Assembly (NCBI RefSeq): GCF_000142905.1
Contig: NW_013657677.1
Coordinates: 523,167 to 587,166 of the forward strand
DNA: 64,000 nt
Origin: Thecamonas trahens ATCC 50062
Lineage: Eukaryota; Protista; Apusomonadida
Reading direction: 5' to 3'
In this document: piece after piece, positions 4,316-25,880 of the stretch
Numbering within the stretch: position 1 is the stretch's first letter
Layout: the number at the start of each line of letters is the position of its first letter
The notes under the pieces: model-generated
Told to the model about the DNA's origin: nothing
What the model saw: the letters and a program-made list of their open reading frames with translations, nothing else
Databases searched by the model: none
Position numbers and translations under genes: made by a program

Positions 4316-7300
4316 TCATCGCAGCCGCGGTGAGACAACAAGGCCACGCGACCGGGTCTGTGTCCGCGATGACATCATCGGCCGGGTCGGGGTGGTGTTC
4401 GCGGCCGGGCCGGTGCGAGCGCCAGCCCCAGGCCGGGTCGGAGTGAGCCCAGCTGCGACCATATCAAAGGTGGCCGAGCCCGCGGGCGTGCGGGTGACGC
4501 CGGCGACGTGGGCAGATTCGGGGATCTTGCGGGTGTCAGGCGCTGGTGCGCCAACGGGCTGCATGCTCGGGAGAGCGCAGACTCGTGCCGCCACCGCCGC
4601 CGCCACCACGGCAACCATGGCCAGCCACACGTACCACCACGAAAAGCCCGAGCCGCCGTGGGCGGCCACCTTGTGGTTCCGCGGCACGTCCCAAGCGTCG
4701 TCGCGCCCGGCTGCCGCCAAGCCTCCAGCCTCTGGGGTCGGCGTCGGCGGCGGTGCGGTGCGGGTCGCCCGCTGCGCATGCGTTGCGTCGACCGAGACGC
4801 CGGCACTGTTGCTCGGCACGTCGATCCGGCCCGAGCCCCGCGACGTCCGCCGCGCTGCCGTCCCGGTTCCGGCCGGATCGTACAGCACCCGCAGCCGCAT
4901 CTCCTGCCCGGTCACTGTCGACACGAGCACGAGCTCGACGTCAGACCACGGGCTGCTCCGTGGCGCGGTGCCGGTCAGCACCACCTGGAGGACCACCACC
5001 GACGACGAGTTTGACGTCGTCGCCACCGCCACCTTGTCGCTCGCTCCGGCCACGCTCACTGCCATCTCGCTTCCCGGGCCAAGAATCTCTACCTCGGCCG
5101 ACGGCGACGACTGCGAGAGTGAGACGCCTGCAGACGGGAAGACCGAGAACGCCGGCGCGTACGCAACCTTGCGCGAGCCGCTCACCTCGCCCACCTTTGC
5201 CACTACCTCCAGCTCGCGCAGCGTCGACGGGAGCAGCAGGTCCGTCACTGCCGGAGAGAGCGGCGTCACCACGCACCCGCGCCCGCTCGCCGACGCCAGC
5301 GCCCAGCCGCGCGGCTCGACGTTACACACTAGCGGCAGCTTGTGATCAAGCCCGCTCCTCTCGCCGAGCGCAAGCGGCCACTCGGCCCCGCCCTTGGCCC
5401 CGCCCCAAACTGTGACCGGGAACAGGTACTCGCGCCGGAGCCCATCGGCCGTCACGCCCACGTTGGTCATCAGCTCCGCGCCGCCGGCCTCGCTGCCCAC
5501 CTCGGCCCGGACCGGCTCCACAACCCACACGTGCGTGTACGTCCGCTCGTGGCCGAGCACCACGTGCACCGTCGTCGTCCCGAGCCCAACGGCGCGCGCA
5601 GCCCCGGTCACAGGATCGACCGCCACCACGCTCGCGTCACCGGAGCTCCACTGCGCCGTCGCCGTGCTCACTGGACCGTCAGCCGCAACCCCGGCCACAA
5701 ACGCTGGCGAGAGTGCAAACTGGATCCGCCCGCCAAGTGCCACTCGCGGCGATGCAGGCGTCACCGCCTCGCCCACAACAACACGCACATGTCCCACCAC
5801 CTCGCTGTTCGACGCCAGCGCGACAGAGACCAGAGCCGCGCCCTGCGACGCCCCGCGGACCGAGAGCGAGCCGTCGTCGGCAACCGTCACGGCCACCCGC
5901 CCCGGATGCGACACGCTCACCGCAAACTCGAGCTTGGCCGCAGGCACCGAGAACTGCCGCCCGAGGTCGTCGAGCACCCGGATCTCGTACCGCCGCACCC
6001 CGCCCATCGGGAGCGCCGCGTCGCCACCTGCACTCGCCTCGCCACTCTCGACGTCCTCGTCAGTCCGCACAATCGCAATGTGGTCAATGGCCGCCACACG
6101 GACGCCCACAAGCACAAACTCGCCGTCAGACGTGTCACGAACGGCCACAAACCCGGTCCCCATCTTGGCGCTGGCATGGACACAGCCCGAGCCGTCGACG
6201 ACCAGCTCGGCGTGCCCGGCCACGCCACTCCCACCGTGCTCCGGAATCATCCGCGGCTCGCTGGCGTCCTCTTCAACCTCATCGGCGTCCTCTCCAACCT
6301 TGCGGATCCGCGCCAACGTCGGCGGCCGCAGCTCGGCCGGCGGTGCACTCACCACCGCAAACTCGAGCGACGATGACCGCAGACCGTCGCGGTTGGTGGC
6401 GATGCATGCCGAGCCGAGTGGGTGGATGACCAGCAGCGGCTCGCACGGCGGCGGCACAACAAGCGATAGCACCGGGAGAACAGTGAGTACCACCGAGTCG
6501 GTGTACGACACCACGCTTGTCTCGCCTCCGCACGCCACATCGGCCTCGTACGTCACCGACACCGTCGCTGTTCCTGGCGACAGCGCCCACGCCATGATCG
6601 AGAGGTCGCCGTTGGCTGACACAGCAGTCGCCTTGGCCTCGTGCTGTGACGCGAGGCCGACCACGCCGGCGCCCGACGTCACCTCCCACCGGAAGCTCGG
6701 CTTCCTCCCTGCAGCAAGGATGGCAAACGTATGCGGCGATTCGCCGCGCGAGCCCTCAACGGCCAGCGCAATTCGCGAGCCGGCCAGCACCACCGCGTTC
6801 GGCACCGCAATCCGCACGCCCGCAAGCTTGCGGACCGTAACCGGGACCGTCGCCGACGCATACACCATCGACGCCTGAGCCGCTGTCTCGTACCCGGTCG
6901 CTGCCACGGTGAGCACCGTTGTCCCCACGTCGAGGCCAACAACCTCGCCAGTCATCGGGTTTGCCACCTGCGCCACACCCGAGTCCCTGATCTTGTGCAC
7001 GTGCTCGACGTGTGCCGACGGCCCGCCAAGGACAAGCACCTGCGCCGACGCCCCGCACACCAGCTCGATGCTGGCAGGCTCGAGCCGGAGCGGTGGGAAG
7101 ACCGAAATGTGATGTGCGCCAGAGCTGAGCTGCACACCTGACGCTGTCGTCACAGTTGCTGTCAACCTCGCCGTTCCGAGCTCGCGCCCGTGGATCTTGT
7201 ACCGCGAGAGGTCCGACGGCGAGAGCGTCACCGCCGTCACTACAGCCTCGTCGTCGATCACCAGCCGCACCTCCATAAACGCCAACTGCGGCGCAGGGAA

Positions 7301-10300
7301 CGCCTTGTGGCCTGGCGCATACACGGTGATCATTGCCTCGACTTCGGATCCGTAGTGCACCATCGACGGGAGCTTCAGCTCGACACTCGCAAGGTCTGCC
7401 ACGGTGACCGGAATAGCCAGCGGCGCACCACCCACGAGGCACGTGTCGCTCGCCACCAGCGTCGTCGTCCCGATCGCCAGCGGAACCAGTGAGACGCCCG
7501 GAACCCCGTGCCCGAGCGGCGTAATCGCCACCGGCTCGGCGCCGCTCGTCTCGGCCAGGCTAAAGCTGACGTGGCCCGAGCCGTGGCGGACAACCACAGA
7601 GTCCTTGTTGTCGGCAGCCGAGAAGAGGACAACCGCAGGCGGATCGACAACCGGCGCCGGGCGGACCTCGAGCTCGACCACGTGCTCCAGACGCGCCCGC
7701 GACGACCACCGCGACCGTGCCACAGCGCCAAGCGTCCGCGTCCGCGCCGCAGAAAGCACCTCAGGTGCGTAGCCCGAGACAGCAACCCGGAGCTCGAGCG
7801 AAGTCGCCTGCTCGCCGACCGAGAGCATGGCAACGCCGTTGCCTGCGTCAAGCGCAGCGCTCGCCGGTGTCGCCGCCCATGTCACAGCTAGCGAGGTGGC
7901 GTTGTCAAACACGGCGCCGTTCTCGGCAAGGACCCGGACTGCCAGCCGAACGTCCTGGTTCGCCTGCAGCGTGTATGACGAGGCCACCGACGAAGTGCCG
8001 ACCGGCGCCCGCACCGAGCTGCACTCGTCGCCGAGCTCGCGCTCGCCAACACTCACGTCGAGGGTGTGCGGCGGGGCGCAGACAAAATCGACGTCGACCG
8101 TTTCGCGCGCCGGCACCGGGTTAGACGCAGACGGTGCGTTGGTGACGGCAAACACAAGCGTTGCGTCCACATGCTGCAAGCACGTGACCCGATACGCGTA
8201 GCCGGCAGAGGCGGAGACCGGCTCGATGCGGATTGCACCTGACGGCTGGCCCGGCGCCAGCAGAGAGACCTTGTGGGTAGACGGCTCAAAGACCCAAGGC
8301 GCAGGGCCGCCGGCAAAGGCAAACGTCCACGAGGTGCCAAGCGCCACCAGCGCGCCTGGCGTGCCTGCTGTCACCGCGGGGTGGCAAAGAGGGCAAGCTC
8401 GGCCATGTGCGGGCCGAATGAGACCTGAAGCGTGGCCGTGCCTTCGCCGAGAGCCCGGACGCGGATGGCGTGGCAGCCGCCGGGCGCGAGTGACGCACCG
8501 CTCGATGTGTCGAGCCGGAAAATGCCCGGGTCGGTGATGCGGAACCGGAACGGGAGAATCGAGCAGGCGGTGAATGCTTCGCCGCGGGCGTCGAGGACTT
8601 GGACTGATACCTCGAGCGCGCTCCCGACCTGGACCTCAACCAGCTGGTCAGGAAAGCCGAGCGCAGCCGGCTCGGCGACGGTAACGTTGGCGGCGACGCC
8701 GTTGAACGGATCAGAGGTGTCGCTGACATACAGCTTGCCGGCGCCAGCACGGGCGTGCGCCTCAATGATACCTGTGGCGGCATCGAGGAGCGAGAACGGC
8801 GGGTGGCCACTCGCGGAAGCCGTCGAAAAGTGGAACACGCCCGAGCCACCCGATGCCGCAAAGGCAAATGTCTGGCCCGGCGGAAGGTGAACAGCGCTGG
8901 GCAAGAGGGCGAGCGGCGGACCGACAACAAACTCGGCCGAGCCGTCGACGGCCCGGGCGGTGAGATCAACGGCTGCGAGAGCCGAAGCCAGATGCGAGGC
9001 AAGCGAGAGCGGACGAGAGAGCCGGACAAGCCGGGCCGTAGCCGAGCCAGGCCCAGACGCGGACTTGGTCATCGCCCACACTGCAGCGCCGTTGGCCGAC
9101 GTGTTGCGCGGCTGGACGAGCTCGCGCGGAAGCTCGACCTCAAAGTGCATGTTGGCAGTCGCCAGCAGCTCGCGGTCGTCCGAGTCGTGGACATGGACGG
9201 CGACCTCGTACCGAGCCTCGTGCACAAGGGTCCACGGCGCGGGCATGGCGAGCGAGCGTGGACTTGTCCGAATAGGCTGCGCGGTGAGGGTGAGATAGTC
9301 CGGAAGCGCGACACGAACAAGGGCATGGACCGAGTTGAGCTCGAGGTCGGCGGCCGAGACGGTGACGGTGGCGACGCCAGGGCGGAGCGCGGTGGCGAGG
9401 CCGGTCGCCGGATCGACGTGGAGCACTTTGGCGTCCGACGACGACCAGGAGTAGCTCGCATCCGGCATGGGTATGCCCACCAGCGGCGCCGACGCCGATG
9501 CCGTGGCGTTGGAAGCCCATGAGGTGGCGCCACGGGTAAAGAGCTTGTACTGGAGTTGGGTGCCAGGGACAAGGCCCACAGGCGTGTACGGCTCGAGGTG
9601 CAGTGGCTCGAGGACGGAAATGTCGGCCGAGGCCGGCTCCACCGACGCCGAGTCCTCACCAGAGAGGCGCAGCGCAACGGTGGCCGTGCCGGTTGCTTCG
9701 CCGCGGAGCACAACCTGGAACGAGTGCAGGCCGCGGTCATGCTCGGCCTCAGCCATGCCGTAGTCTGCGGCGTGAGCCATGGCGAGGACCTTGGGCGCCG
9801 AGACCGACCAGGCGAACCGGAGGCCCGAGAGCGAGTTGAAGACATTGCCCTGGGCGTCAAAGGCCTGCGCTTCGATGACCTCTGCGTCGCCGCGGTACAT
9901 GGTCCGCGACGTGGTGAGGATGGCAAGCGAGGCGATGGTGTCGACAAAGACCTCACAGCGGAGGACCGTGCCGGTGGCGCGGTCAGAGGCAAAGACCCAG
10001 ACCGAGGCCCGCTCGCCGTCGGGCAGCGCATGCGCAGTGAGCACAATCTCGTCAACACAGTCGAGCCCCGTGGCCGGAGCCGATCGAGCCGCGGCAGCCG
10101 GAGCAAAGGCCACCACCTCGGGATTCGACGACTCCCAGGCAAAGCATCCGCCGGAAGCCGAGAGCGAGTGTGTCGCACCATGTGGAAGGAGCAGGTTGAG
10201 CGACGAGATGGAGGCAGCTCCTGCAGGTGAAGCACTGCTCATGCCGACCACCATGGCCAGTGCCATCAGCAGCGGCAGAAGCACCAGCGCAGCTCGCCCA

Positions 10301-10329
10301 GACCAGGCGGTCCTCTGGTTGCGCGCCAT
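4316..10329 (-). CDS. NUP210: Nuclear pore membrane glycoprotein gp210/Nup210, split by a 1-nt frameshift near 8380
   Basis: Signal peptide, LNLLLP, ASGGCFAWESSNP, LRCEVFVDTI, AQAFDAQGNVFNSLSGLRFAW, repeated Ig-like (Big_2) segments, a C-terminal TM and a TP-rich tail. ORFs 8371..10581 and 4316..8374 join if one C is added. Confidence 0.9.
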
Positions 10330-10617
10330 CTGATCCCCGGGTCGCACACCCCGCGTGAGTTGGCGTGCGGCAGAGGGGAAGCGAAAGGGGATGTATGTGT
10401 GTATGGAGGGGGGGGTGGAGGGGTGGAGGGGGGGAGGGGTGAGGTGTATTCGGAATACGCGTACTGGTTGGATGTTGGCGCGCTGTGCTGTGCGAGAAGT
10501 GTGTCTTGGCAGAAGCATAGCATAGCTACGAAGCCAAGGCCGAGGCATGAGGCTATGACGGCTGTGGGACGGCGCGGACATGGTCGCACACCACGGTGAC
10601 TCAGGTCATCAGCAGGT

Positions 10618-17457: not shown

Positions 17458-17514
17458 GATTGTTGTGCGTGTGTAGCCTGCGTGCACGTATGTGTGTATG
17501 TGCGAGGGGAGTGT

Positions 17515-17519
<5 letters not shown>

Positions 17520-17597
<78 letters not shown>
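17520..17597. repeat. (TG)n microsatellite, about 39 units
   Basis: Directly visible between the divergent OSCP1 and MED7 genes. Confidence 0.97.
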
Positions 17598-17598
<1 letters not shown>

Positions 17599-17694
17599 TA
17601 TGTTCCATCGCCTGCAGGGACTGGAGTTGGGTGTGGTGGACGGTGAGCGGAGAGCGACGGGCCAGGTCTGGCGGCCTGGGCTGGCGGCTTAGGC

Positions 17695-18900: not shown

Positions 18901-21900
18901 ATGCACGGCCTCATTCCCGCACTTGTGTGTGGTCTTGCACTCGCCGCGGTCTTGCCACACGTAAAGGGCGTGCTTACCGGGTATGCTCCGCCTTCCAACG
19001 TCACCCTTGTCGGCATTTACCCGCTCACCGGCTCGCTTGCCGGCCCTGGAGCGCACGTCCACACCGGCGTCTTACTCGCCATCGAGGATATCAACCGCAA
19101 CCCGAACCTTCTCCCCAAGGTATGTCCCGCACCTTGCTAATCCCCCCTGTTCCCTTGCTCCCTGGCGTGTAGCGCCAATGCATCCACGCAAGAGTCTGCA
19201 GAGACTGTACTCCCACTCCTCTTTCTCTCTTTCTTCCCCCCTCCCCCTCCGTCTCCCTCCCCCGCTTCCCCGCCCACCTCCTCCCGCGCCCTCTGTCTTG
19301 TGTCGCTCCGCCGTGCTCAACTTGCTTTTCGCCGCGTGGCCGGGTCCACGGCACGATTTTTTCCGGGACCAATTTGTTGCGCTCCGCACAAAGGCCATGA
19401 GGTGGCACTCACAGGAACACGTGCGTGGTGGTGGCGGCAATGCGTCATGGCCTTTGGCTCCACCAAATGGTGTGGGCGATGACAGACTATGCTGTTGCTG
19501 GATGCGTATGACAGCGAGGGATCCGCGTCTGACGCCACGCTTGGCATGTTGACTGCCATCCAGAAGCACGGTGATGAGATTGTGGGCGTGGTCGGCGCCG
19601 GTGTCTCGTCGGTCTCGCGTGCCATCCAAAACATCGCGTCGCTGTTCAAGCTTCCGCAGATCTCACCAGCGTCAACAGCATCGGTGCTGTCGGACAAGGA
19701 CGCGTACCCAACTTTTGCGCGTCTGCTGGCGCCCGAGTCGTTGCGTGGTGCGGCCATGGCGCGGATCATCAAGGCGTACGGCTGGAAGCGAGTCATGGTC
19801 ATCTTCCACTCGGACGACTACGGTGCGTCGGCCGGACAGGCGTTTGCAGCCTACGCCACAGAGCTCGGAATCGAGGTCACGGCGCAACTCTCGTACCGCG
19901 CGGGCACCTCCGACTTTTCCCAGGTTGCCTCGCTCATGCAGAAGACTACCCGGACGCATGTGGTTTTTCTCGCTGGCTTTTCCTATGAAATGGCCGGCAT
20001 TTCAAGGAGCTCTCGGCGCGCAAGCTGCTTGACGGACGTTTCATCTTCTGTGGCGGCGACTGGATGACCTCTGAGTTTATCGCGTCGACCGACCTGCCGG
20101 AGCGTGAGCTGGTGGGGCTCATTGGCCTTGTCTCATCATTTGAGGAGACTGCGCACACGGCCCAGTTTCGCGCTCGTTGGCCGTCACTCAACGAGACCCT
20201 GTATCCCGCAGCCAAGTTTCCCGAGCCGACCGCCTTTGCGCTCTTCTCGTACGACGTGGTCACGCTCTTTGCACATGCGATACATGCCGCCATTTCTGCC
20301 GAGACCGACGTGTACGACGGCCTCGCGCTCATGGATCGCATTGCGCAGACGACCTTTATCGGTCTGACAGGGAACATCACACTCGACTTTAACTACGACC
20401 GCGTCTCGCAGTACTCGGTGGTCAACTACCAAGGTGGTGCAAATATGCGGACCGTGGGAACGTGGCGGGTCGACCAGACGCTACATCTCACCACCCCGCT
20501 TCGGTTTTCGGGCAACACCACCGAGATACCGTTCCTGAAAGAGGATGTGCCAACGTCTGAGAGCAACACAGTGTTTATTCTTGTCATTGTTCTCTCGACC
20601 ACGATTGTGGTCATTGTCGGCGTCCTCCTGCTGGTAGCAGTCCTGATGTTGCGGCGGCGGCGGGCGCAGGTGGTCAACCTCGAGGTCCAGAACAAGCAGC
20701 TCAATCTCGAGACGCGGGCGCTCAACTCGCGACTGGACACTCTGTCGGAGATGACGTCGGCTGAGTCGGGTCGGACAACGACGTCGCCGGTAATCGACAT
20801 TCCGGTCAACCAAGTGCTAAGCCTACTGTGGCGGCTGCAGGGCACAGTCCACTCACCGAAGGATCTGCAAGACATCAACGCTGCCATCGAGGCCATCCAG
20901 TCGAACGTCTTGTTTACACCCGAGACCAAGGACGCGAACACAGCGTCGCGCGACTTGGACACCCGCGAGTGGATCCGCGCAACACTCATCGAGTCGCCAT
21001 GGACCGGTGAGGCGCAGACCGGCTTGTCGCGGGCCATGGCCTCGATCTCCCTCTCGGCAACCGGCAAAGTCGACTCCCTCGACCAGTCGGGTCAGCTCGC
21101 CGCCACCATTCCTGGCCTCGCCGACCCGGACTTTGACATATTCACCTACGCGCACACAGACGCTATGCCTCTCCGCTCTATTTTCGTTGCCATTGTTCAA
21201 GAGCGCGGCCTCCTCTCCGTGCTTGGCATCGACAAGGTCAAGTTTGCCAAGTTTGCCAAAGTCCTCGACCTCGCGTGCGAGGGCACCACCAATGCCTTCC
21301 ACAACGTCCTCCACTCGGCACACTCTCTCCAGTACGCGCACTACATCCTCACCTCGTCGGGCCTGTACAATATCCTCTCGCCGCTGGACGCTTTTGCCGC
21401 CTTTTTGCTGTCGCCATCAAAGACATCGGCCACCCGGGCGTGACGGCGTCGTTCCTGGTCAAAACCCAGTCAAAGATCGCCATCCGCTACTCGAATCGGT
21501 CGGTCCTTGAGCTGCACCACCTCGCGCTCGCCTTCCAGCTGGCCCTCTCGCCCGAGTTCAAGCTCTTTGCGCCGCTCTCGCCTGCCAAGTTTGACCAGTT
21601 CCACAGGCTGGTGACAGACCTCGTCCTCGCATCAGACATGCACCGACACGTCGAGTTTATGTCGCGGTTCTCGATCACGCTCGGTTTGTCGATGCCTGGC
21701 GCGCGCGCAGTGCCGCCCGCAGCTGACAGAGCAAAGCCCCACCCTAACGGGATGCGGCCGACTGGTTCCTCTGCGCGCGAGGCGCTCCTCACCCGACTGC
21801 GCGGCGACGACAAGCTCCTCCGTCTCGCCCTCGCCATGCTCGTCAAGCTCACGCCGTTCTCGTTTGTCGCGCGTCCGGCTCCACTGAGCAAGGTCTGGGC

Positions 21901-22440
21901 CCACCGGTTCACCTGTGAGCAGTTCTCGCAGGGCCGCAAAGAAGCCGCGCTTGGAATCGCCGTCTCTCCGTTTATGGACGGCAAGTCGACGTCTGTCACC
22001 AAGGGCCTCACCTCCATCGCCCGCATCGTAGTCAAGCCCATGTTCCAGGCTTGGGTCGCCGCCTTTGGCGGCATCGAGCTCACGTCCAACGTCAATGCCT
22101 TCCTCACCACGTGGCTCACCAAGCTCCCCGAGGTGGCCGCCGCAGAGCACGACGCCGCCGTCGCGGCCATGACTGCTTACGACACTGCCTACTTTCGTAC
22201 CCTGAGCAAGCTCACCCACACCGTCAACTCGATGTCGCTTCCGGCCATTGCAGACGACGGCGCTGGCAATAGCAAGGCCCGCGCTTTGTCGAGTCGCTGC
22301 TCTCGTACGCCGGCGATGTCCACGATCCGGAGCTCATTTCGGCCATGCCGTTGGTCGATGATCGGCTGGACATCGCCGACGACGTCTGTGCGTTCTCCGA
22401 GCCTGCCCTCACCACTGCGTGCCAGGAAGAAGATAGCTGA
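18901..22440 (+). CDS. Single-pass receptor: signal peptide, ANF-receptor/Venus-flytrap ectodomain, TM, coiled coil and degenerate class I PDE domain. Intron 19120-19485; frameshifts near 20000, 21402 and probably 22276
   Basis: LAIEDINRNPNLLP, GVVGAGVSSVS, PQISPASTASVLSDKDAYPTFAR, YGWKRV and FIGLTGNITLD (Venus flytrap). TM at about 20572-20650. FHNVLH, DIGHPG, SVLELHH, LASDM, QGRKE and SPFMD (PDE). Confidence 0.8.
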
Positions 22441-22621
22441 TGCCGACGCTTTCGAGGTTAAATTCTCCGCCATGCATCATTTGCCCGACTGCACTCTGCG
22501 GGCGTGGCGGGCGGCAGCAACTTGGTTGTGGGCGGCTCGCAGCCCGGCGGTGAGTCGCTGACTCGCGGACCCACGCTGCCAAAGCGAAAGTCGCCACCGC
22601 TCGACTCGACTCCCGCCCCGC

Positions 22622-23273: not shown

Positions 23274-25880
23274 ATGCTGCGGGGCGGAAGCGGAGCAACG
23301 TGGCTGACCAGCAGCATCCGCGGGTGGGCACGGTGGTACCAGGCGGCTGCGGTTGAGGCCAAGTGGCGCACACGCTGGGCTGCGGCGGCGGCCAAGGACG
23401 GCGCGAGGATGGACACGCTGGGCGCCGCCCGGTTTGAGAGCGGCGGCGGGGCTGACATGGCGGCTGCGGCCGGGCCTAACGACGGTGCCAGGAAGGGCTC
23501 GGGCGAGAAGGCGTATGTGCTGTCGATGTTTCCTTATCCGTCGGGCGAGCTGCACATGGGCCATGTCCGTGTCTACACCATGTCGGATGTGCTGGCGAGA
23601 TACGCGGCGGCGCGCGGGCGCAAGCTGCTGCATCCGATGGGATGGGACGCGTTTGGCCTACCGGCGGAGAACGCGGCTCTACAGCGCGGTGCGCATCCGG
23701 GTGAGTGGACAAAGCGCAACATTGCGTCGATGCGCGAGCAGATGGATGCGCTCGGGCTCGGATTCCAGTGGGAGACGTCGGACGTGTCGACGGCAAGCCC
23801 GGCGTACTTTGCCCACACACAGCGGCTGTTTTGGAGATGCACAAGGCCGGCCTGGCGTACATGGATGAGGCGCCGGTCAACTGGGATCCGGTCGACGGGA
23901 CAGTTCTTGCCAACGAGCAGGTAGACGCCGAGGGCCGGTCGTGGCGGTCGGGCGCGCTGGTGGAGAAGCGGCATCTGCGGCAGTGGTTTGTGGCCATCAC
24001 AAAGTACGCACAGCCTCTGCTTGACGGCCTTGATGCCCTCGAGTGGCCAGCGCAAGTCAAGCACATGCAAGCCAACTGGATCGGCCGCTCCGAGGGATAC
24101 CTCATTCCGTTTGGCGACGGGCTTGAGGCCTTTACCACCCGACCAGAGACGCTGCCTGCGGTCGAGTTTGTCGCTGTTGCCCCAGGCTCACCGCTTGCCG
24201 ACTGCGAGGCGCGGCACCCACTGACGGGACAGCGCCTCCCGGTCTACGAGGCCGAGTACGTACTTGATGGCTACGGGACCGGAGCAGTGATGGGCGTGCC
24301 ACTGGCGGACGAGCGCGACGCGGCGTTTGCAGCGTCGCTGCCGTCCGGCGGCTCGGCCCTTGCTGCTCGCGGCGTGTCGCTGGACGACATTGCGCTCGAT
24401 CCGTGTCCGAACGCTCTAGCTGCTGAGCTGCGTAAGCTCGGCGCACGGCCGCACGTCCAGTTTCGACTTCGCGACTGGCTAGTCTCACGTCAGCGGCGGT
24501 GGGTACGCCGATTCCGATGATTCACTGTTCAGACTGCGCCGAGGCGGTACCGGTGCCCGACAGCGAGCTTCCTGTTGTGTTTCCTGACGGCATCAAGTAC
24601 GGCGTGGCGTCCGCGTCGGCGTCACTCGATGACGGGGCCAGCAGCGAAGGCCCAGATCCAGTGCTCTCGGCGTGGGCACACGAGGTTTCGTGTCCGCAGT
24701 GTGGATCTCAGTCTGCCGTCCGCGAGACAGACACCATGGATACGTTTGTGGACTCGTCGTGGTACTTTCTCCGCTACGCCTCGCCGTCGTCGCCTAGCTT
24801 CCCGGCTGAGAAGAAGGCCCTTGACGCGCTGCTTCCGGTGGACGTCTACATCGGCGGCATCGAGCACGCTATCCTTCACTTGCTCTACGCCCGGTTTGTG
24901 ACCCACTTCCTGGCTGACCGCGGCCTCGTCTCGGTCCGCGAGCCGTTTTCCAAGCTCCTCGCCCAGGGCATGGTCCACGCGCCCACGTACCAGGTGCAGG
25001 GATCAGGCAAGTACCTTGCACCTCATGAAGTTGCTGTGGCCGACGACGGGCAGGCGTGTTGTCGAGCAACTGGCGAGCCGTTGGTGGTGACCCACGAGAA
25101 GATGTCCAAGAGCAAGTACAATGGCGTCGATCCGGTGCCGTTGGTGGAGGAGCATGGGCGGACGTGCTGCGGCTGTTCATGCTCTTCAAGGCACCGCCGG
25201 ACAAGGTGCTTGACTGGGACGATGCCGGGATCCAGGGACAGGCACGCTGGATGCGTCGGCTGGCGCTGCTGCCGTCGACAGTCACGGCACTGCCAGAGAA
25301 CGCTGCCGTCGAGGGTGCGGCGGCTGTGGCCGCAGCGGGCGTAGTCGACGCCACCAATGAGGCGCTCGAGGCGGTGACGCGCGCGTTTGAGAAGAGCAAC
25401 GCGTTCAACACCGCTGTGGCGGCGCTGATGAAGCTTTCGACGGTTGTGGGAAAGACCGCAGCCGATGGAGCTGCGCCTAAGGCGACCCTGCTGGCGGCCA
25501 TGGAGCGGCTAGCGGTGATGCTGGCGCCGATGGCGCCGCACCTCGCAGAAGAGCTTTGGGAGGGCCTTGGACACCGCGAGTCCGTTCTCACCGCGCCGTG
25601 GCCCGAGCCGCTGCCTGTGGTGCAGCTTGCGGCGGGGCCTGGCGACGAGTGCATCGAGGTGGTGGTCCAGGTCAACGGCAAGAAGCGCGGCTCGGTGAGC
25701 ATTGCCGCCGATGATGCGGTACGCGGGAGCGAGGACAAGGTCCTCGCCACCATCCGCGAAGCCGCAGCCGACAACGTCGGCCTTGATCGAGCCCTCGCCG
25801 ACAAGGACGTCGTCCGCGTTGTCATTGTCCCGTCACGTAGCCCGAACGGCCACACCCTTGTCAATGTAGTCGTGCGATGA
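23274..25880 (+). CDS. LARS2: Mitochondrial (bacterial-type) leucyl-tRNA synthetase; three 1-nt frameshifts near 23830, 24502 and 25157
   Basis: [13 protein letters not shown] (HIGH), [57 protein letters not shown] and VQVNGKKRG, with an N-terminal presequence-like region. Confidence 0.93.

What the first reader, a model, noticed from the sequence alone, without database searches (positions are those of the whole stretch)
18901..22440. Venus-flytrap receptor coupled to a cyclic-nucleotide phosphodiesterase domain
Seen: once the 19120-19485 intron and 1-nt homopolymer slips are corrected, one protein carries a signal peptide, an ANF-receptor/class C GPCR-type Venus-flytrap ectodomain, a single TM, a short coiled coil and a class I PDE domain. 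Established: this ectodomain normally drives guanylyl cyclases (NPRs), class C GPCRs or iGluRs. Inference: this is the mirror image of a receptor cyclase, a ligand-gated 'receptor PDE' architecture, which I do not recognise as a characterised family.
Basis: partly seen in the sequence, partly recalled or inferred. Interest (0 to 1): 0.8.

Follow-up and report, generated by a model that had tools for sequence, protein, structure and literature searches.

The report
Venus-flytrap receptor with dead PDE domain
This Thecamonas trahens gene encodes a single-pass surface receptor with a glutamate-receptor-like ligand-binding domain fused to a phosphodiesterase-like domain that has lost key catalytic residues. 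The fusion is real and apparently unstudied, but this copy probably signals without degrading cyclic nucleotides.

Summary
Window 18901-22440 (+) carries one gene: signal peptide, ANF_receptor Venus-flytrap domain, one transmembrane helix, coiled coil, and a class I PDE-like domain. The organism is Thecamonas trahens.

- **Intron:** 19120-19485 lies at the same phase-0 position as in two intact paralogs. Each paralog holds both domains in one uninterrupted reading frame.
- **Frame breaks:** all three are 1-nt deletions in T runs. The neighbouring single-copy LeuRS and a NUP210-like gene carry the same kind of break, so assembly error is more likely than a pseudogene.
- **Wider distribution:** the fusion also occurs in chytrid and blastoclad fungi, an MMETSP transcript, and marine and other metagenomes, always with a single transmembrane helix. 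I found no paper describing it.
- **Catalytic site:** the 'ligand-gated PDE' reading needs correction for this gene. All five members of the Thecamonas-type clade lack the zinc-binding His of the HD motif (Lys here). That His is kept in 113 of 114 other PDE domains compared.
- **Extra losses here:** the window copy also lacks Asp318 and the purine-clamp Gln369, so it is most likely a pseudo-PDE.
- **Intact relatives:** the fungal and other relatives keep nearly the full catalytic set and are the better candidates for true receptor PDEs.

Verdict: a new variant of a known kind, of moderate to high interest.

The parts
18901..19119 (+). Exon 1: start codon, hydrophobic signal peptide (MHGLIPALVCGLALAAVL...) and the first strand and helix of the flytrap domain, ending ...NPNLLPK.
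   Evidence: ORF list and hydropathy. It matches exon 1 of the annotated paralogs P0001 and P0152. Codon-position GC is 0.70/0.45/0.71.
19120..19485 (+). Intron, 366 nt, phase 0, GTATGT...ACAG.
   Evidence: Same position (after LLP[K/N/D]) as the annotated introns of the C4 paralog (368 nt) and the C37 paralog (258 nt). It shows no codon periodicity.
19486..20001 (+). Exon 2, first frame segment: flytrap lobe carrying the conserved Ser (VSSVS), Thr (AST), Glu (APE) and Tyr (DYG) positions.
   Evidence: Pfam ANF_receptor 2.3e-32. PDB best hits are mGluR8/7/6 at 3e-20. Motif alignment.
20000..20002 (+). Frame break 1: T3 run, apparently one T short (frame 1 to frame 0).
   Evidence: tblastn with the C4 paralog is colinear across the break: residues 2-166 then 165-659. 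Sequence context.
20001..20570 (+). Second half of the flytrap domain, including GGDW (the mGluR GSDGW position), plus the stalk.
   Evidence: Pfam ANF_receptor 3.3e-13, profile positions 233-352. Alignments.
20571..20651 (+). Single transmembrane helix (VFILVIVLSTTIVVIVGVLLLVAVLML), followed by RRRR at 20652-20663.
   Evidence: Hydropathy. All relatives have the same single helix followed by basic residues.
20664..21128 (+). Juxtamembrane coiled coil (about 20664-20760, AQVVNLEVQNKQLNLETRALNSRLDTL) and a clade-specific helical linker (…VIDIPVNQVLSLLWRLQG…AIEAIQSNVLFTPET…).
   Evidence: Conserved in the three paralogs and in P0004 and P0006 ('link' profile; alignment). In the AlphaFold model of the C4 paralog the TM helix runs on as one helix, residues 439-503. 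No Pfam or Atlas match.
21129..21404 (+). N-terminal part of the PDE-like domain, including FHNVLHSAH (H160 and H164 kept).
   Evidence: Pfam PDEase_I positions 1-37. Motif table.
21402..21406 (+). Frame break 2: T5 run, apparently one T short (frame 0 to frame 2), immediately before the HD motif.
   Evidence: tblastn is colinear: residues 165-659 then 650-906. Context. GC3 periodicity switches here.
21404..22200 (+). Main part of the PDE-like domain. It reads AIKDIGHPG (H200K), SVLELHH, LASDMHRH, KLTPFSF (D318P) and TKGLTSIARIVVKPMF (Q369L).
   Evidence: Pfam PDEase_I 7.4e-41. PDB alignment to PDE4C and others. Catalytic-site tables.
22285..22287 (+). Probable frame break 3: T3 run (frame 2 to frame 1).
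   Evidence: Codon-position GC is 0.69/0.39/0.76 in frame 1 and out of phase in frame 2. There is no homology support, because the tails are not conserved.
22285..22440 (+). Acidic C-terminal tail (FVESLLSYAGDVHDPEL...CQEEDS) and the TGA stop at 22438-22440.
   Evidence: Translation and codon periodicity. This is the weakest part of the gene model.

Best explanation
The locus is one Thecamonas trahens gene for a type I, single-pass surface receptor. It consists of a signal peptide, a class-C-GPCR-like Venus-flytrap ectodomain, one TM helix, a juxtamembrane coiled coil with a clade-specific helical linker, and a cytosolic domain homologous to class I cyclic-nucleotide phosphodiesterases.

It is one of three paralogs. 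These three loci hold all the ANF_receptor matches found in the genome. The three frame breaks are most likely homopolymer undercalls of the assembly, so the gene is probably intact in the organism.

Inferred mechanism:
- The protein dimerises through the flytrap, coiled coil and PDE-like domains.
- A small ligand, probably an alpha-amino acid or similar, closes the flytrap.
- The rearrangement is passed through the TM and coiled-coil helices to the cytosolic dimer.

The PDE-like domain has Lys for the zinc-binding His of the HD motif, Pro for the zinc-binding Asp318 and Leu for the purine-clamp Gln369. The output is therefore probably not hydrolysis. More likely it is a conformational or scaffolding signal, for example regulated binding of a partner or pairing with a more intact paralog.

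Shown here: the architecture, the paralogs, the residue losses and the distribution. Inferred: the ligand class, dimerisation, loss of activity and the nature of the output.
For: Architecture and single gene:
- Pfam hits on the pieces.
- One ORF links the flytrap half, the TM helix and the start of the PDE domain.
- Two paralogs carry both domains in one open frame of 953 and 987 aa. They are annotated as single proteins P0001 and P0152.
- The intron position is conserved.
- The AlphaFold model of the C4 paralog has mean pLDDT 82, with blocks mostly above 90 in both domains and one long TM-plus-coiled-coil helix.
- The flytrap fold matches GABA-B, mGluR5 and CaSR ectodomains, target-normalised TM-score 0.74-0.80.

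Frameshifts as assembly errors:
- All three breaks are 1-nt deletions in T runs with colinear homology.
- LeuRS has three 1-nt deletions, in T4, G3 and G3 runs, and is the only copy of its type in the genome.
- The NUP210-like gene has one in a C4 run.

Pseudo-PDE:
- H200 is K, K, K, R, I in the five clade members, but H in 113 of 114 other PDE domains, including 10 of the 11 other T. trahens PDEs.
- Other catalytic residues are lost in scattered fashion across the clade.
- The window copy has the lowest PDEase_I score in the genome.
- The clade is monophyletic on a long branch in both the PDE and flytrap trees.

Ligand class:
- The Ser, Thr, Asp/Glu, Tyr and Asp positions of the mGluR amino-acid site are kept.
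Against: - No transcript or independent DNA copy of this gene was found, so intactness is inferred from neighbouring genes.
- The window copy has unique extra losses (D318P, Q369L), as a decaying copy would.
- The third frame break has no homology support.
- Loss of activity is inferred from residues only. A Lys in a metal site does not strictly exclude catalysis, and the C4 paralog lacks only H200, H233 and Q369 of the 11 positions compared.
Confidence: 0.6

Rival explanations
1. Active ligand-gated receptor PDE. The flytrap domain controls real cAMP or cGMP hydrolysis, and Lys takes over or is tolerated at the metal site.
For: - The fold and most motif positions are kept: H160, H164, D201, H204, E230, H233, D272, H276.
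- Architectural relatives with nearly the full catalytic set compared exist: P0027, P0038, P0043, P0060, P0111, P0129 (motif blocks).
- The flytrap of P0027 sits in the same starred clade as the Thecamonas flytraps.
Against: - Two of the four zinc ligands and the purine-clamp Gln are replaced in this copy.
- H200 is His in 113 of 114 other PDE domains.
- Clade members P0004 and C37 have lost three or four catalytic residues. This pattern is what relaxed selection on catalysis would produce.
Confidence: 0.12
2. Recent pseudogene. The three frameshifts are real and this third paralog is decaying.
For: - Three frame breaks in 3.2 kb.
- The lowest PDEase_I score of the 14 matches in the genome.
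- Unique D318P and Q369L substitutions.
- NCBI annotates only a 459-aa fragment.
- Most other PDE genes in the assembly have long unbroken frames.
Against: - The same kind of break, always a 1-nt deletion in a homopolymer, hits the adjacent single-copy LeuRS three times and the NUP210-like gene once.
- There are no in-frame stops or larger indels, and alignment to the paralog is colinear.
- Codon periodicity is kept to the end of the gene.
Confidence: 0.18
3. Two adjacent genes, a flytrap receptor and a separate PDE, wrongly merged.
For: The assembly as it stands gives separate ORFs, and the public annotation has only a fragment.
Against: - One ORF (20064-21440) contains the flytrap half, the TM helix, the linker and the start of the PDE domain.
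- Both paralogs and P0004, P0027 and P0038 are single uninterrupted ORFs.
- P0060 is a single 3.7-kb record, described by the source as an MMETSP transcript, with a complete 1199-aa ORF.
Confidence: 0.02

Closest known systems
Receptor guanylyl cyclases (natriuretic peptide receptors GC-A and GC-B)
   Same: ANF_receptor-type flytrap ectodomain, single TM helix, coiled-coil signalling helix, dimeric cytosolic cyclic-nucleotide enzyme domain. The enzyme is coupled directly to the receptor with no G protein.
   Different: The cytosolic part is a PDE homolog, not a kinase-homology domain plus cyclase. No Guanylate_cyc or Pkinase hit was found on any piece. The ectodomain is closer to mGluR, GABA-B and CaSR than to NPRs. 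The PDE-like domain is probably inactive.
Rhodopsin phosphodiesterase (Rh-PDE) of choanoflagellates (e.g. PMC8774190)
   Same: A membrane sensor fused directly to a class I PDE domain through a helical linker. Found in a unicellular relative of animals and fungi.
   Different: The Rh-PDE sensor is a multi-pass rhodopsin gated by light, and its PDE is active. Here the sensor is an extracellular flytrap with one TM helix, and the catalytic site is degenerate.
Class C GPCR ectodomains (mGluR, CaSR, GABA-B)
   Same: Best sequence and structure matches for the ectodomain. The Ser, Thr, Asp/Glu, Tyr and Asp positions of the amino-acid site are conserved.
   Different: No cysteine-rich domain and no 7TM domain, only a single TM helix.
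Flytrap-TM-PDE proteins of zoosporic fungi and protists: Sorochytrium KAL7750821.1, Borealophlyctis KAJ3286403.1, Nowakowskiella KAJ3121466.1, an MMETSP transcript, and Logan and ENA contigs
   Same: Same domain order and single-pass topology. A single origin of the fusion is not rejected (AU p = 0.24).
   Different: They keep nearly all 11 catalytic positions compared (each of P0027, P0038, P0043 and P0060 deviates or is gapped at one), including H200, D201 and Q369 where aligned. They lack the Thecamonas-type linker. Their PDE and flytrap domains do not group with the Thecamonas clade in the trees. None has been characterised, as far as I could find.
Bacterial degenerate EAL or GGDEF receptors such as LapD (analogy only, from general knowledge)
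   Same: A membrane receptor whose cytosolic nucleotide-PDE homolog has lost catalysis and works as a binding or conformational module.
   Different: Unrelated fold and nucleotide (c-di-GMP). There is no evidence here for nucleotide binding or inside-out signalling.

Membership tests
Class I cyclic-nucleotide PDE (Pfam PF00233) | Sequence homology to the catalytic-domain profile above the gathering score | tested here: met
   140.8 bits, E = 7.4e-41, on 21275-22558, plus the first 37 profile positions on the preceding frame. PDB hits PDE4, PDE9 and PDE3 at about 1e-22 to 1e-26.
Class I cyclic-nucleotide PDE (Pfam PF00233) | HD signature: His-Asp of HDxxHxG that binds zinc (H200, D201 in PDE4D numbering, numbering from memory) | tested here: not met
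   The window reads AIKDIGHPG, so His is replaced by Lys. His is present in 113 of 114 other domains compared.
Class I cyclic-nucleotide PDE (Pfam PF00233) | Remaining metal ligands (H164, D318) and the invariant purine-clamp Gln369 | tested here: not met
   H164 is kept. D318 is Pro (KLTPFSF) and Q369 is Leu.
Class I cyclic-nucleotide PDE (Pfam PF00233) | cAMP or cGMP hydrolysis | not testable with these tools
   Needs an enzyme assay.
ANF_receptor / type I periplasmic-binding-protein flytrap (PF01094) | Two-lobe flytrap homology over the whole profile | tested here: met
   Profile positions 31-185 (2.3e-32) and 233-352 (3.3e-13) on consecutive pieces. The paralog model matches class C ectodomains at target-normalised TM-score 0.74-0.80.
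Receptor guanylyl cyclase | Cytosolic kinase-homology and class III cyclase domains | tested here: not met
   No Pkinase or Guanylate_cyc hit on any piece or paralog.
Class C GPCR | 7TM domain (PF00003) and cysteine-rich NCD3G domain | tested here: not met
   Only one hydrophobic helix after the flytrap. No 7tm_3 or NCD3G hit.
Rhodopsin-PDE | N-terminal microbial rhodopsin domain | tested here: not met
   No rhodopsin domain. The sensor is a flytrap.
Flytrap-TM-PDE architecture (unnamed) | Signal peptide or N-terminal flytrap, exactly one TM helix followed by basic residues, C-terminal PDEase_I domain in one polypeptide | tested here: met
   Met piece by piece in the window. Met in one frame in the paralogs and in 8 other protein clusters.

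The most novel reading that the evidence does not exclude
Flytrap-TM-PDE proteins would be an old, unrecognised family of chemically gated cyclic-nucleotide receptors in flagellated protists and zoosporic fungi. The fungal and protist members with intact sites would be true ligand-gated PDEs, for example amino-acid chemoreceptors of zoospores. The apusomonad clade would have turned the PDE domain into a non-catalytic module: either a cyclic-nucleotide sensor or a ligand-regulated scaffold. It would then be a eukaryotic counterpart of bacterial degenerate-EAL receptors and a rare case of a class I pseudo-PDE.
Probability: 0.3. Interest if true: 0.8.

Novelty: new variant of a known kind. Interest (0 to 1): 0.6.

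Why it matters
**Direct receptor control of degradation.** Direct receptor control of cyclic-nucleotide synthesis is textbook (receptor guanylyl cyclases). Direct receptor control of degradation is known to me only for the light-gated Rh-PDE. A chemically gated PDE family would fill that gap. It would give candidate chemoreceptors for zoospore and flagellate behaviour, and it would offer parts for chemogenetic control of cAMP or cGMP.

**A pseudo-PDE clade.** The Thecamonas clade adds a second point. It is a conserved, duplicated set of receptors whose PDE domain has lost its metal site, and metatranscriptome fragments fall in two of its protein clusters. That makes it a natural case for asking what a class I pseudo-PDE does.

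**Annotation.** The locus is under-annotated because of homopolymer errors in the reference assembly. The neighbouring LeuRS and NUP210-like genes are affected in the same way.

Tried and rejected
- **Independent copy of the window gene.** I wanted one to settle the frameshifts and found none. The word-based protein search with piece C returned only the 459-aa fragment from the window itself. The search with the family alignment added only mGluRs. The metagenome locus scan confirmed no relative.
- **dN/dS on the pseudo-PDE domain.** I compared the C37 paralog with a metagenome scaffold. The two are 99.7% identical in DNA, with only 9 differences, so the test has no power.
- **AU test on the full 119-row PDE tree.** It did not finish in three runs. 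A 44-row subset gave p = 0.24.
- **Linker region.** No Pfam hit and no usable Atlas hit.
- **Homology for the C-terminal tail.** None was found. The third frame break rests on codon periodicity alone.
- **Literature.** Searches for a flytrap-PDE or receptor PDE found nothing relevant. A search for the sequencing technology of the assembly was uninformative.
- **Rejected readings.** A receptor guanylyl cyclase relative (no cyclase domain), a class C GPCR (one TM helix), and two separate genes.
- **Joined model left out.** Every search used the pieces by reference, and the structure prediction was made on the intact C4 paralog.
Full report
**Identity of the sequence.** The window is G000:C3:523167-587166 of a 28.7-Mb, 131-contig assembly. 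It is about 64% G+C. Exon 2 of a paralog is 100% identical to an NCBI protein of Thecamonas trahens ATCC 50062, so the organism is this apusomonad.

**Checking the observation.**
- On the + strand, four pieces in different frames carry the domains. ANF_receptor scores 2.3e-32 on 19489-20064 and 3.3e-13 on 20064-21440. PDEase_I covers profile positions 1-37 at the end of 20064-21440 and scores 7.4e-41 on 21275-22558.
- The 459-aa ORF 20064-21440 alone joins the second flytrap lobe, the only TM helix (20571-20651, followed by RRRR), a heptad-like stretch, a linker and the HNxxH start of the PDE domain. The receptor and the PDE part are therefore not two genes.
- The ATG at 18901 opens a hydrophobic leader.
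- The GT..AG intron 19120-19485 (366 nt, phase 0) lies after ...NLLPK. The annotated paralogs have their single intron at the same place, after LLPN and LLPD, 368 and 258 nt long.
- tblastn with the C4 paralog is colinear across two frame changes: residues 2-166, 165-659 and 650-906, at 46-48% identity.
- Each junction overlaps by one base in a T run (T3 at 20000-20002, T5 at 21402-21406).
- A third change, at T3 22285-22287, is supported only by codon-position G+C: 0.69/0.39/0.76 in the new frame and out of phase in the old one. The tails are not conserved.
- The stop is TGA at 22438-22440.
All searches used the pieces by reference.

**Are the frameshifts real?**
- The adjacent gene (23274-25880) is a bacterial-type, presumably mitochondrial, LeuRS. 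Its Pfam pieces are colinear and it is the only copy of its type in the genome.
- Its conserved motifs are interrupted three times by a missing base, in T4, G3 and G3 runs (23828-31, 24500-02, 25156-58).
- A NUP210-like gene on the minus strand changes frame between its Ig6 and Ig7 domains at a C4 run near 8372.
- That makes seven breaks in three genes within about 22 kb. All are single-base deletions in homopolymers, and one of the genes is a single-copy aminoacyl-tRNA synthetase.
- This is the signature of systematic undercalling, not of decay. I put assembly error at about 0.8.
- It is not proven. No independent copy of the locus could be retrieved, and the public annotation holds only the 459-aa ORF (P0005).

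**The family in the same genome.**
- PF00233 matches 14 places in the genome. PF01094 matches only three loci, and each of them also has the PDE domain.
- The other two loci, C37:221043-223562 and C4:570193-572784, hold both domains in single open frames of 953 and 987 aa. They are annotated as single proteins: AMSG_07791 (1015 aa, P0152) and a 'cAMP-specific phosphodiesterase-4 B isoform' (1065 aa, P0001).
- An AlphaFold model of P0001 has mean pLDDT 82.3. The flytrap (about residues 35-425) and the PDE-like domain (about 630-990) mostly score above 90. One continuous helix, 439-503, spans the membrane and the coiled coil. Three shorter linker helices follow, then a disordered stretch.
- By Foldseek the flytrap matches GABA-B, mGluR5 and CaSR ectodomains at target-normalised TM-score 0.74-0.80.
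- By sequence the window's first lobe is closest to mGluR8/7/6 (3e-20).

**Relatives elsewhere.**
- A profile of the family was searched against 1.84 billion representative proteins. Pfam scans and source look-ups followed.
- ANF_receptor plus PDEase_I was found in eight further clusters.
  - P0004 and P0006 come from ENA metagenome assemblies; P0004 is from a Tara Oceans marine metagenome. MERC metatranscriptome fragments fall in both clusters.
  - P0027 is a single ORF on a 71-kb Logan contig.
  - P0038 is a single ORF on an ENA scaffold.
  - P0060 is a complete 1199-aa ORF on a 3.7-kb MMETSP transcript.
  - Three are fungal proteins: Sorochytrium milnesiophthora KAL7750821.1, Borealophlyctis nickersoniae KAJ3286403.1 and Nowakowskiella sp. 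KAJ3121466.1.
- All have exactly one TM helix between the two domains, followed by basic residues.
- The fusion is therefore a recurrent eukaryotic architecture. I found no paper on it.

**The catalytic site.** Residue numbers follow PDE4D and their roles are from my memory of the structural literature.
- The window aligns to PDE4 structures.
- It keeps H160 and H164 (FHNVLHSAH), D201, H204, E230, H233, D272 and H276.
- It has Lys for H200 (AIKDIGHPG), Pro for D318 (KLTPFSF) and Leu for Q369.
- H200 is replaced in every member of the Thecamonas-type clade: K in all three paralogs, R in P0004 and I in P0006.
- Further losses are scattered across that clade:
  - C37: H164R and D201N.
  - P0004: H160R, H164R, D201G.
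  - P0006: D318L, H233A, Q369H.
  - C4: H233A, Q369H.
- Among 114 other PDE domains, H200 is His in 113. That set includes 10 of the 11 other T. trahens PDEs and all six architectural relatives outside the clade.
- The one exception is a fourth degenerate T. trahens PDE, at C6, which is not linked to a flytrap.
- A loss shared by the whole clade, followed by unsystematic erosion of the remaining catalytic residues on a well-kept fold, is the usual pattern of a pseudoenzyme.
- The six relatives outside the clade keep nearly all 11 positions. Each of P0027, P0038, P0043 and P0060 deviates or is gapped at one of them. These relatives are the plausible active receptor PDEs.

**Phylogeny.**
- The five clade members form one group (SH-aLRT 99) on a long branch in the PDE tree and in the flytrap tree.
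- P0004 pairs with C37 in both trees.
- The window pairs with C4 and P0006 in the flytrap tree. The duplications therefore predate the divergence of these organisms.
- The flytrap of P0027 falls in the same starred clade as the Thecamonas flytraps. This is compatible with descent from an active receptor PDE.
- The three fungal proteins group together and apart from the rest.
- Holding all flytrap-linked PDE domains together is not rejected (log-likelihood 21.8 lower, AU p = 0.24). A single origin is open, not shown.

**Ligand site.**
- Against mGluR4/5/6-like sequences, the window and its clade keep five positions that in mGluRs hold the alpha-amino-acid moiety (role from memory): the Ser of SSV, the Thr of AST, the acidic residue of PPD (Glu here), the Tyr of (N/D)YG and the Asp of GSDGW (GGD-W here).
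- The basic residues that bind glutamate's side chain are not kept.
- An amino-acid-like ligand other than glutamate is a reasonable guess, nothing more.

**Conclusion.**
The flytrap-PDE receptor architecture is real, recurrent and apparently uncharacterised. This gene and its clade, however, are most likely pseudo-PDE receptors.
- An earlier scan note on the same stretch (s1-751828) reached the same view of the catalytic site. I tested it independently here.
- The main open risk is that the window copy is a young pseudogene. I put that at about 0.18.

Noticed in passing
window 23274-25880 (+): The bacterial-type (presumably mitochondrial) LeuRS is the only copy of its type in the genome. In the assembly it is broken by three 1-nt deletions, in T4 (23828-31), G3 (24500-02) and G3 (25156-58) runs.
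   Followed up: yes
window 4316-10581 (-): A NUP210-like nucleoporin gene changes frame between its Ig6 and Ig7 domains near 8372, at a C4 run. This is probably another homopolymer assembly error.
   Followed up: partly
G000:C6:307419-308078 (L014): A fourth degenerate PDE domain in T. trahens, not linked to a flytrap. It has H164R, H200F, D201Q, H233A and Q369R.
   Followed up: partly
G000 whole genome: ANF_receptor matches occur only at the three flytrap-PDE loci. No other ANF_receptor-containing gene, such as a class C GPCR or a receptor cyclase, turned up in this first-look search.
   Followed up: partly
L003 (ENA ERZ23486198, ACIN21-1_SAMN05421913 scaffold_4491): A metagenome scaffold is 99.7% identical in DNA to the T. 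trahens C37 paralog. The same species, or a very near strain, is present in that sample.
   Followed up: partly
L015 (Tara Oceans metagenome contig, PRJEB4352): P0004, the relative that pairs with the C37 paralog in both trees, is encoded as one intron-less 1076-aa ORF. A FAM221-domain gene overlaps its 3' end on the other strand.
   Followed up: no
window 17460-17600: A long (GT)n microsatellite lies upstream of the receptor gene. It reads as a poly-Cys/Val ORF artefact in the ORF list.
   Followed up: no
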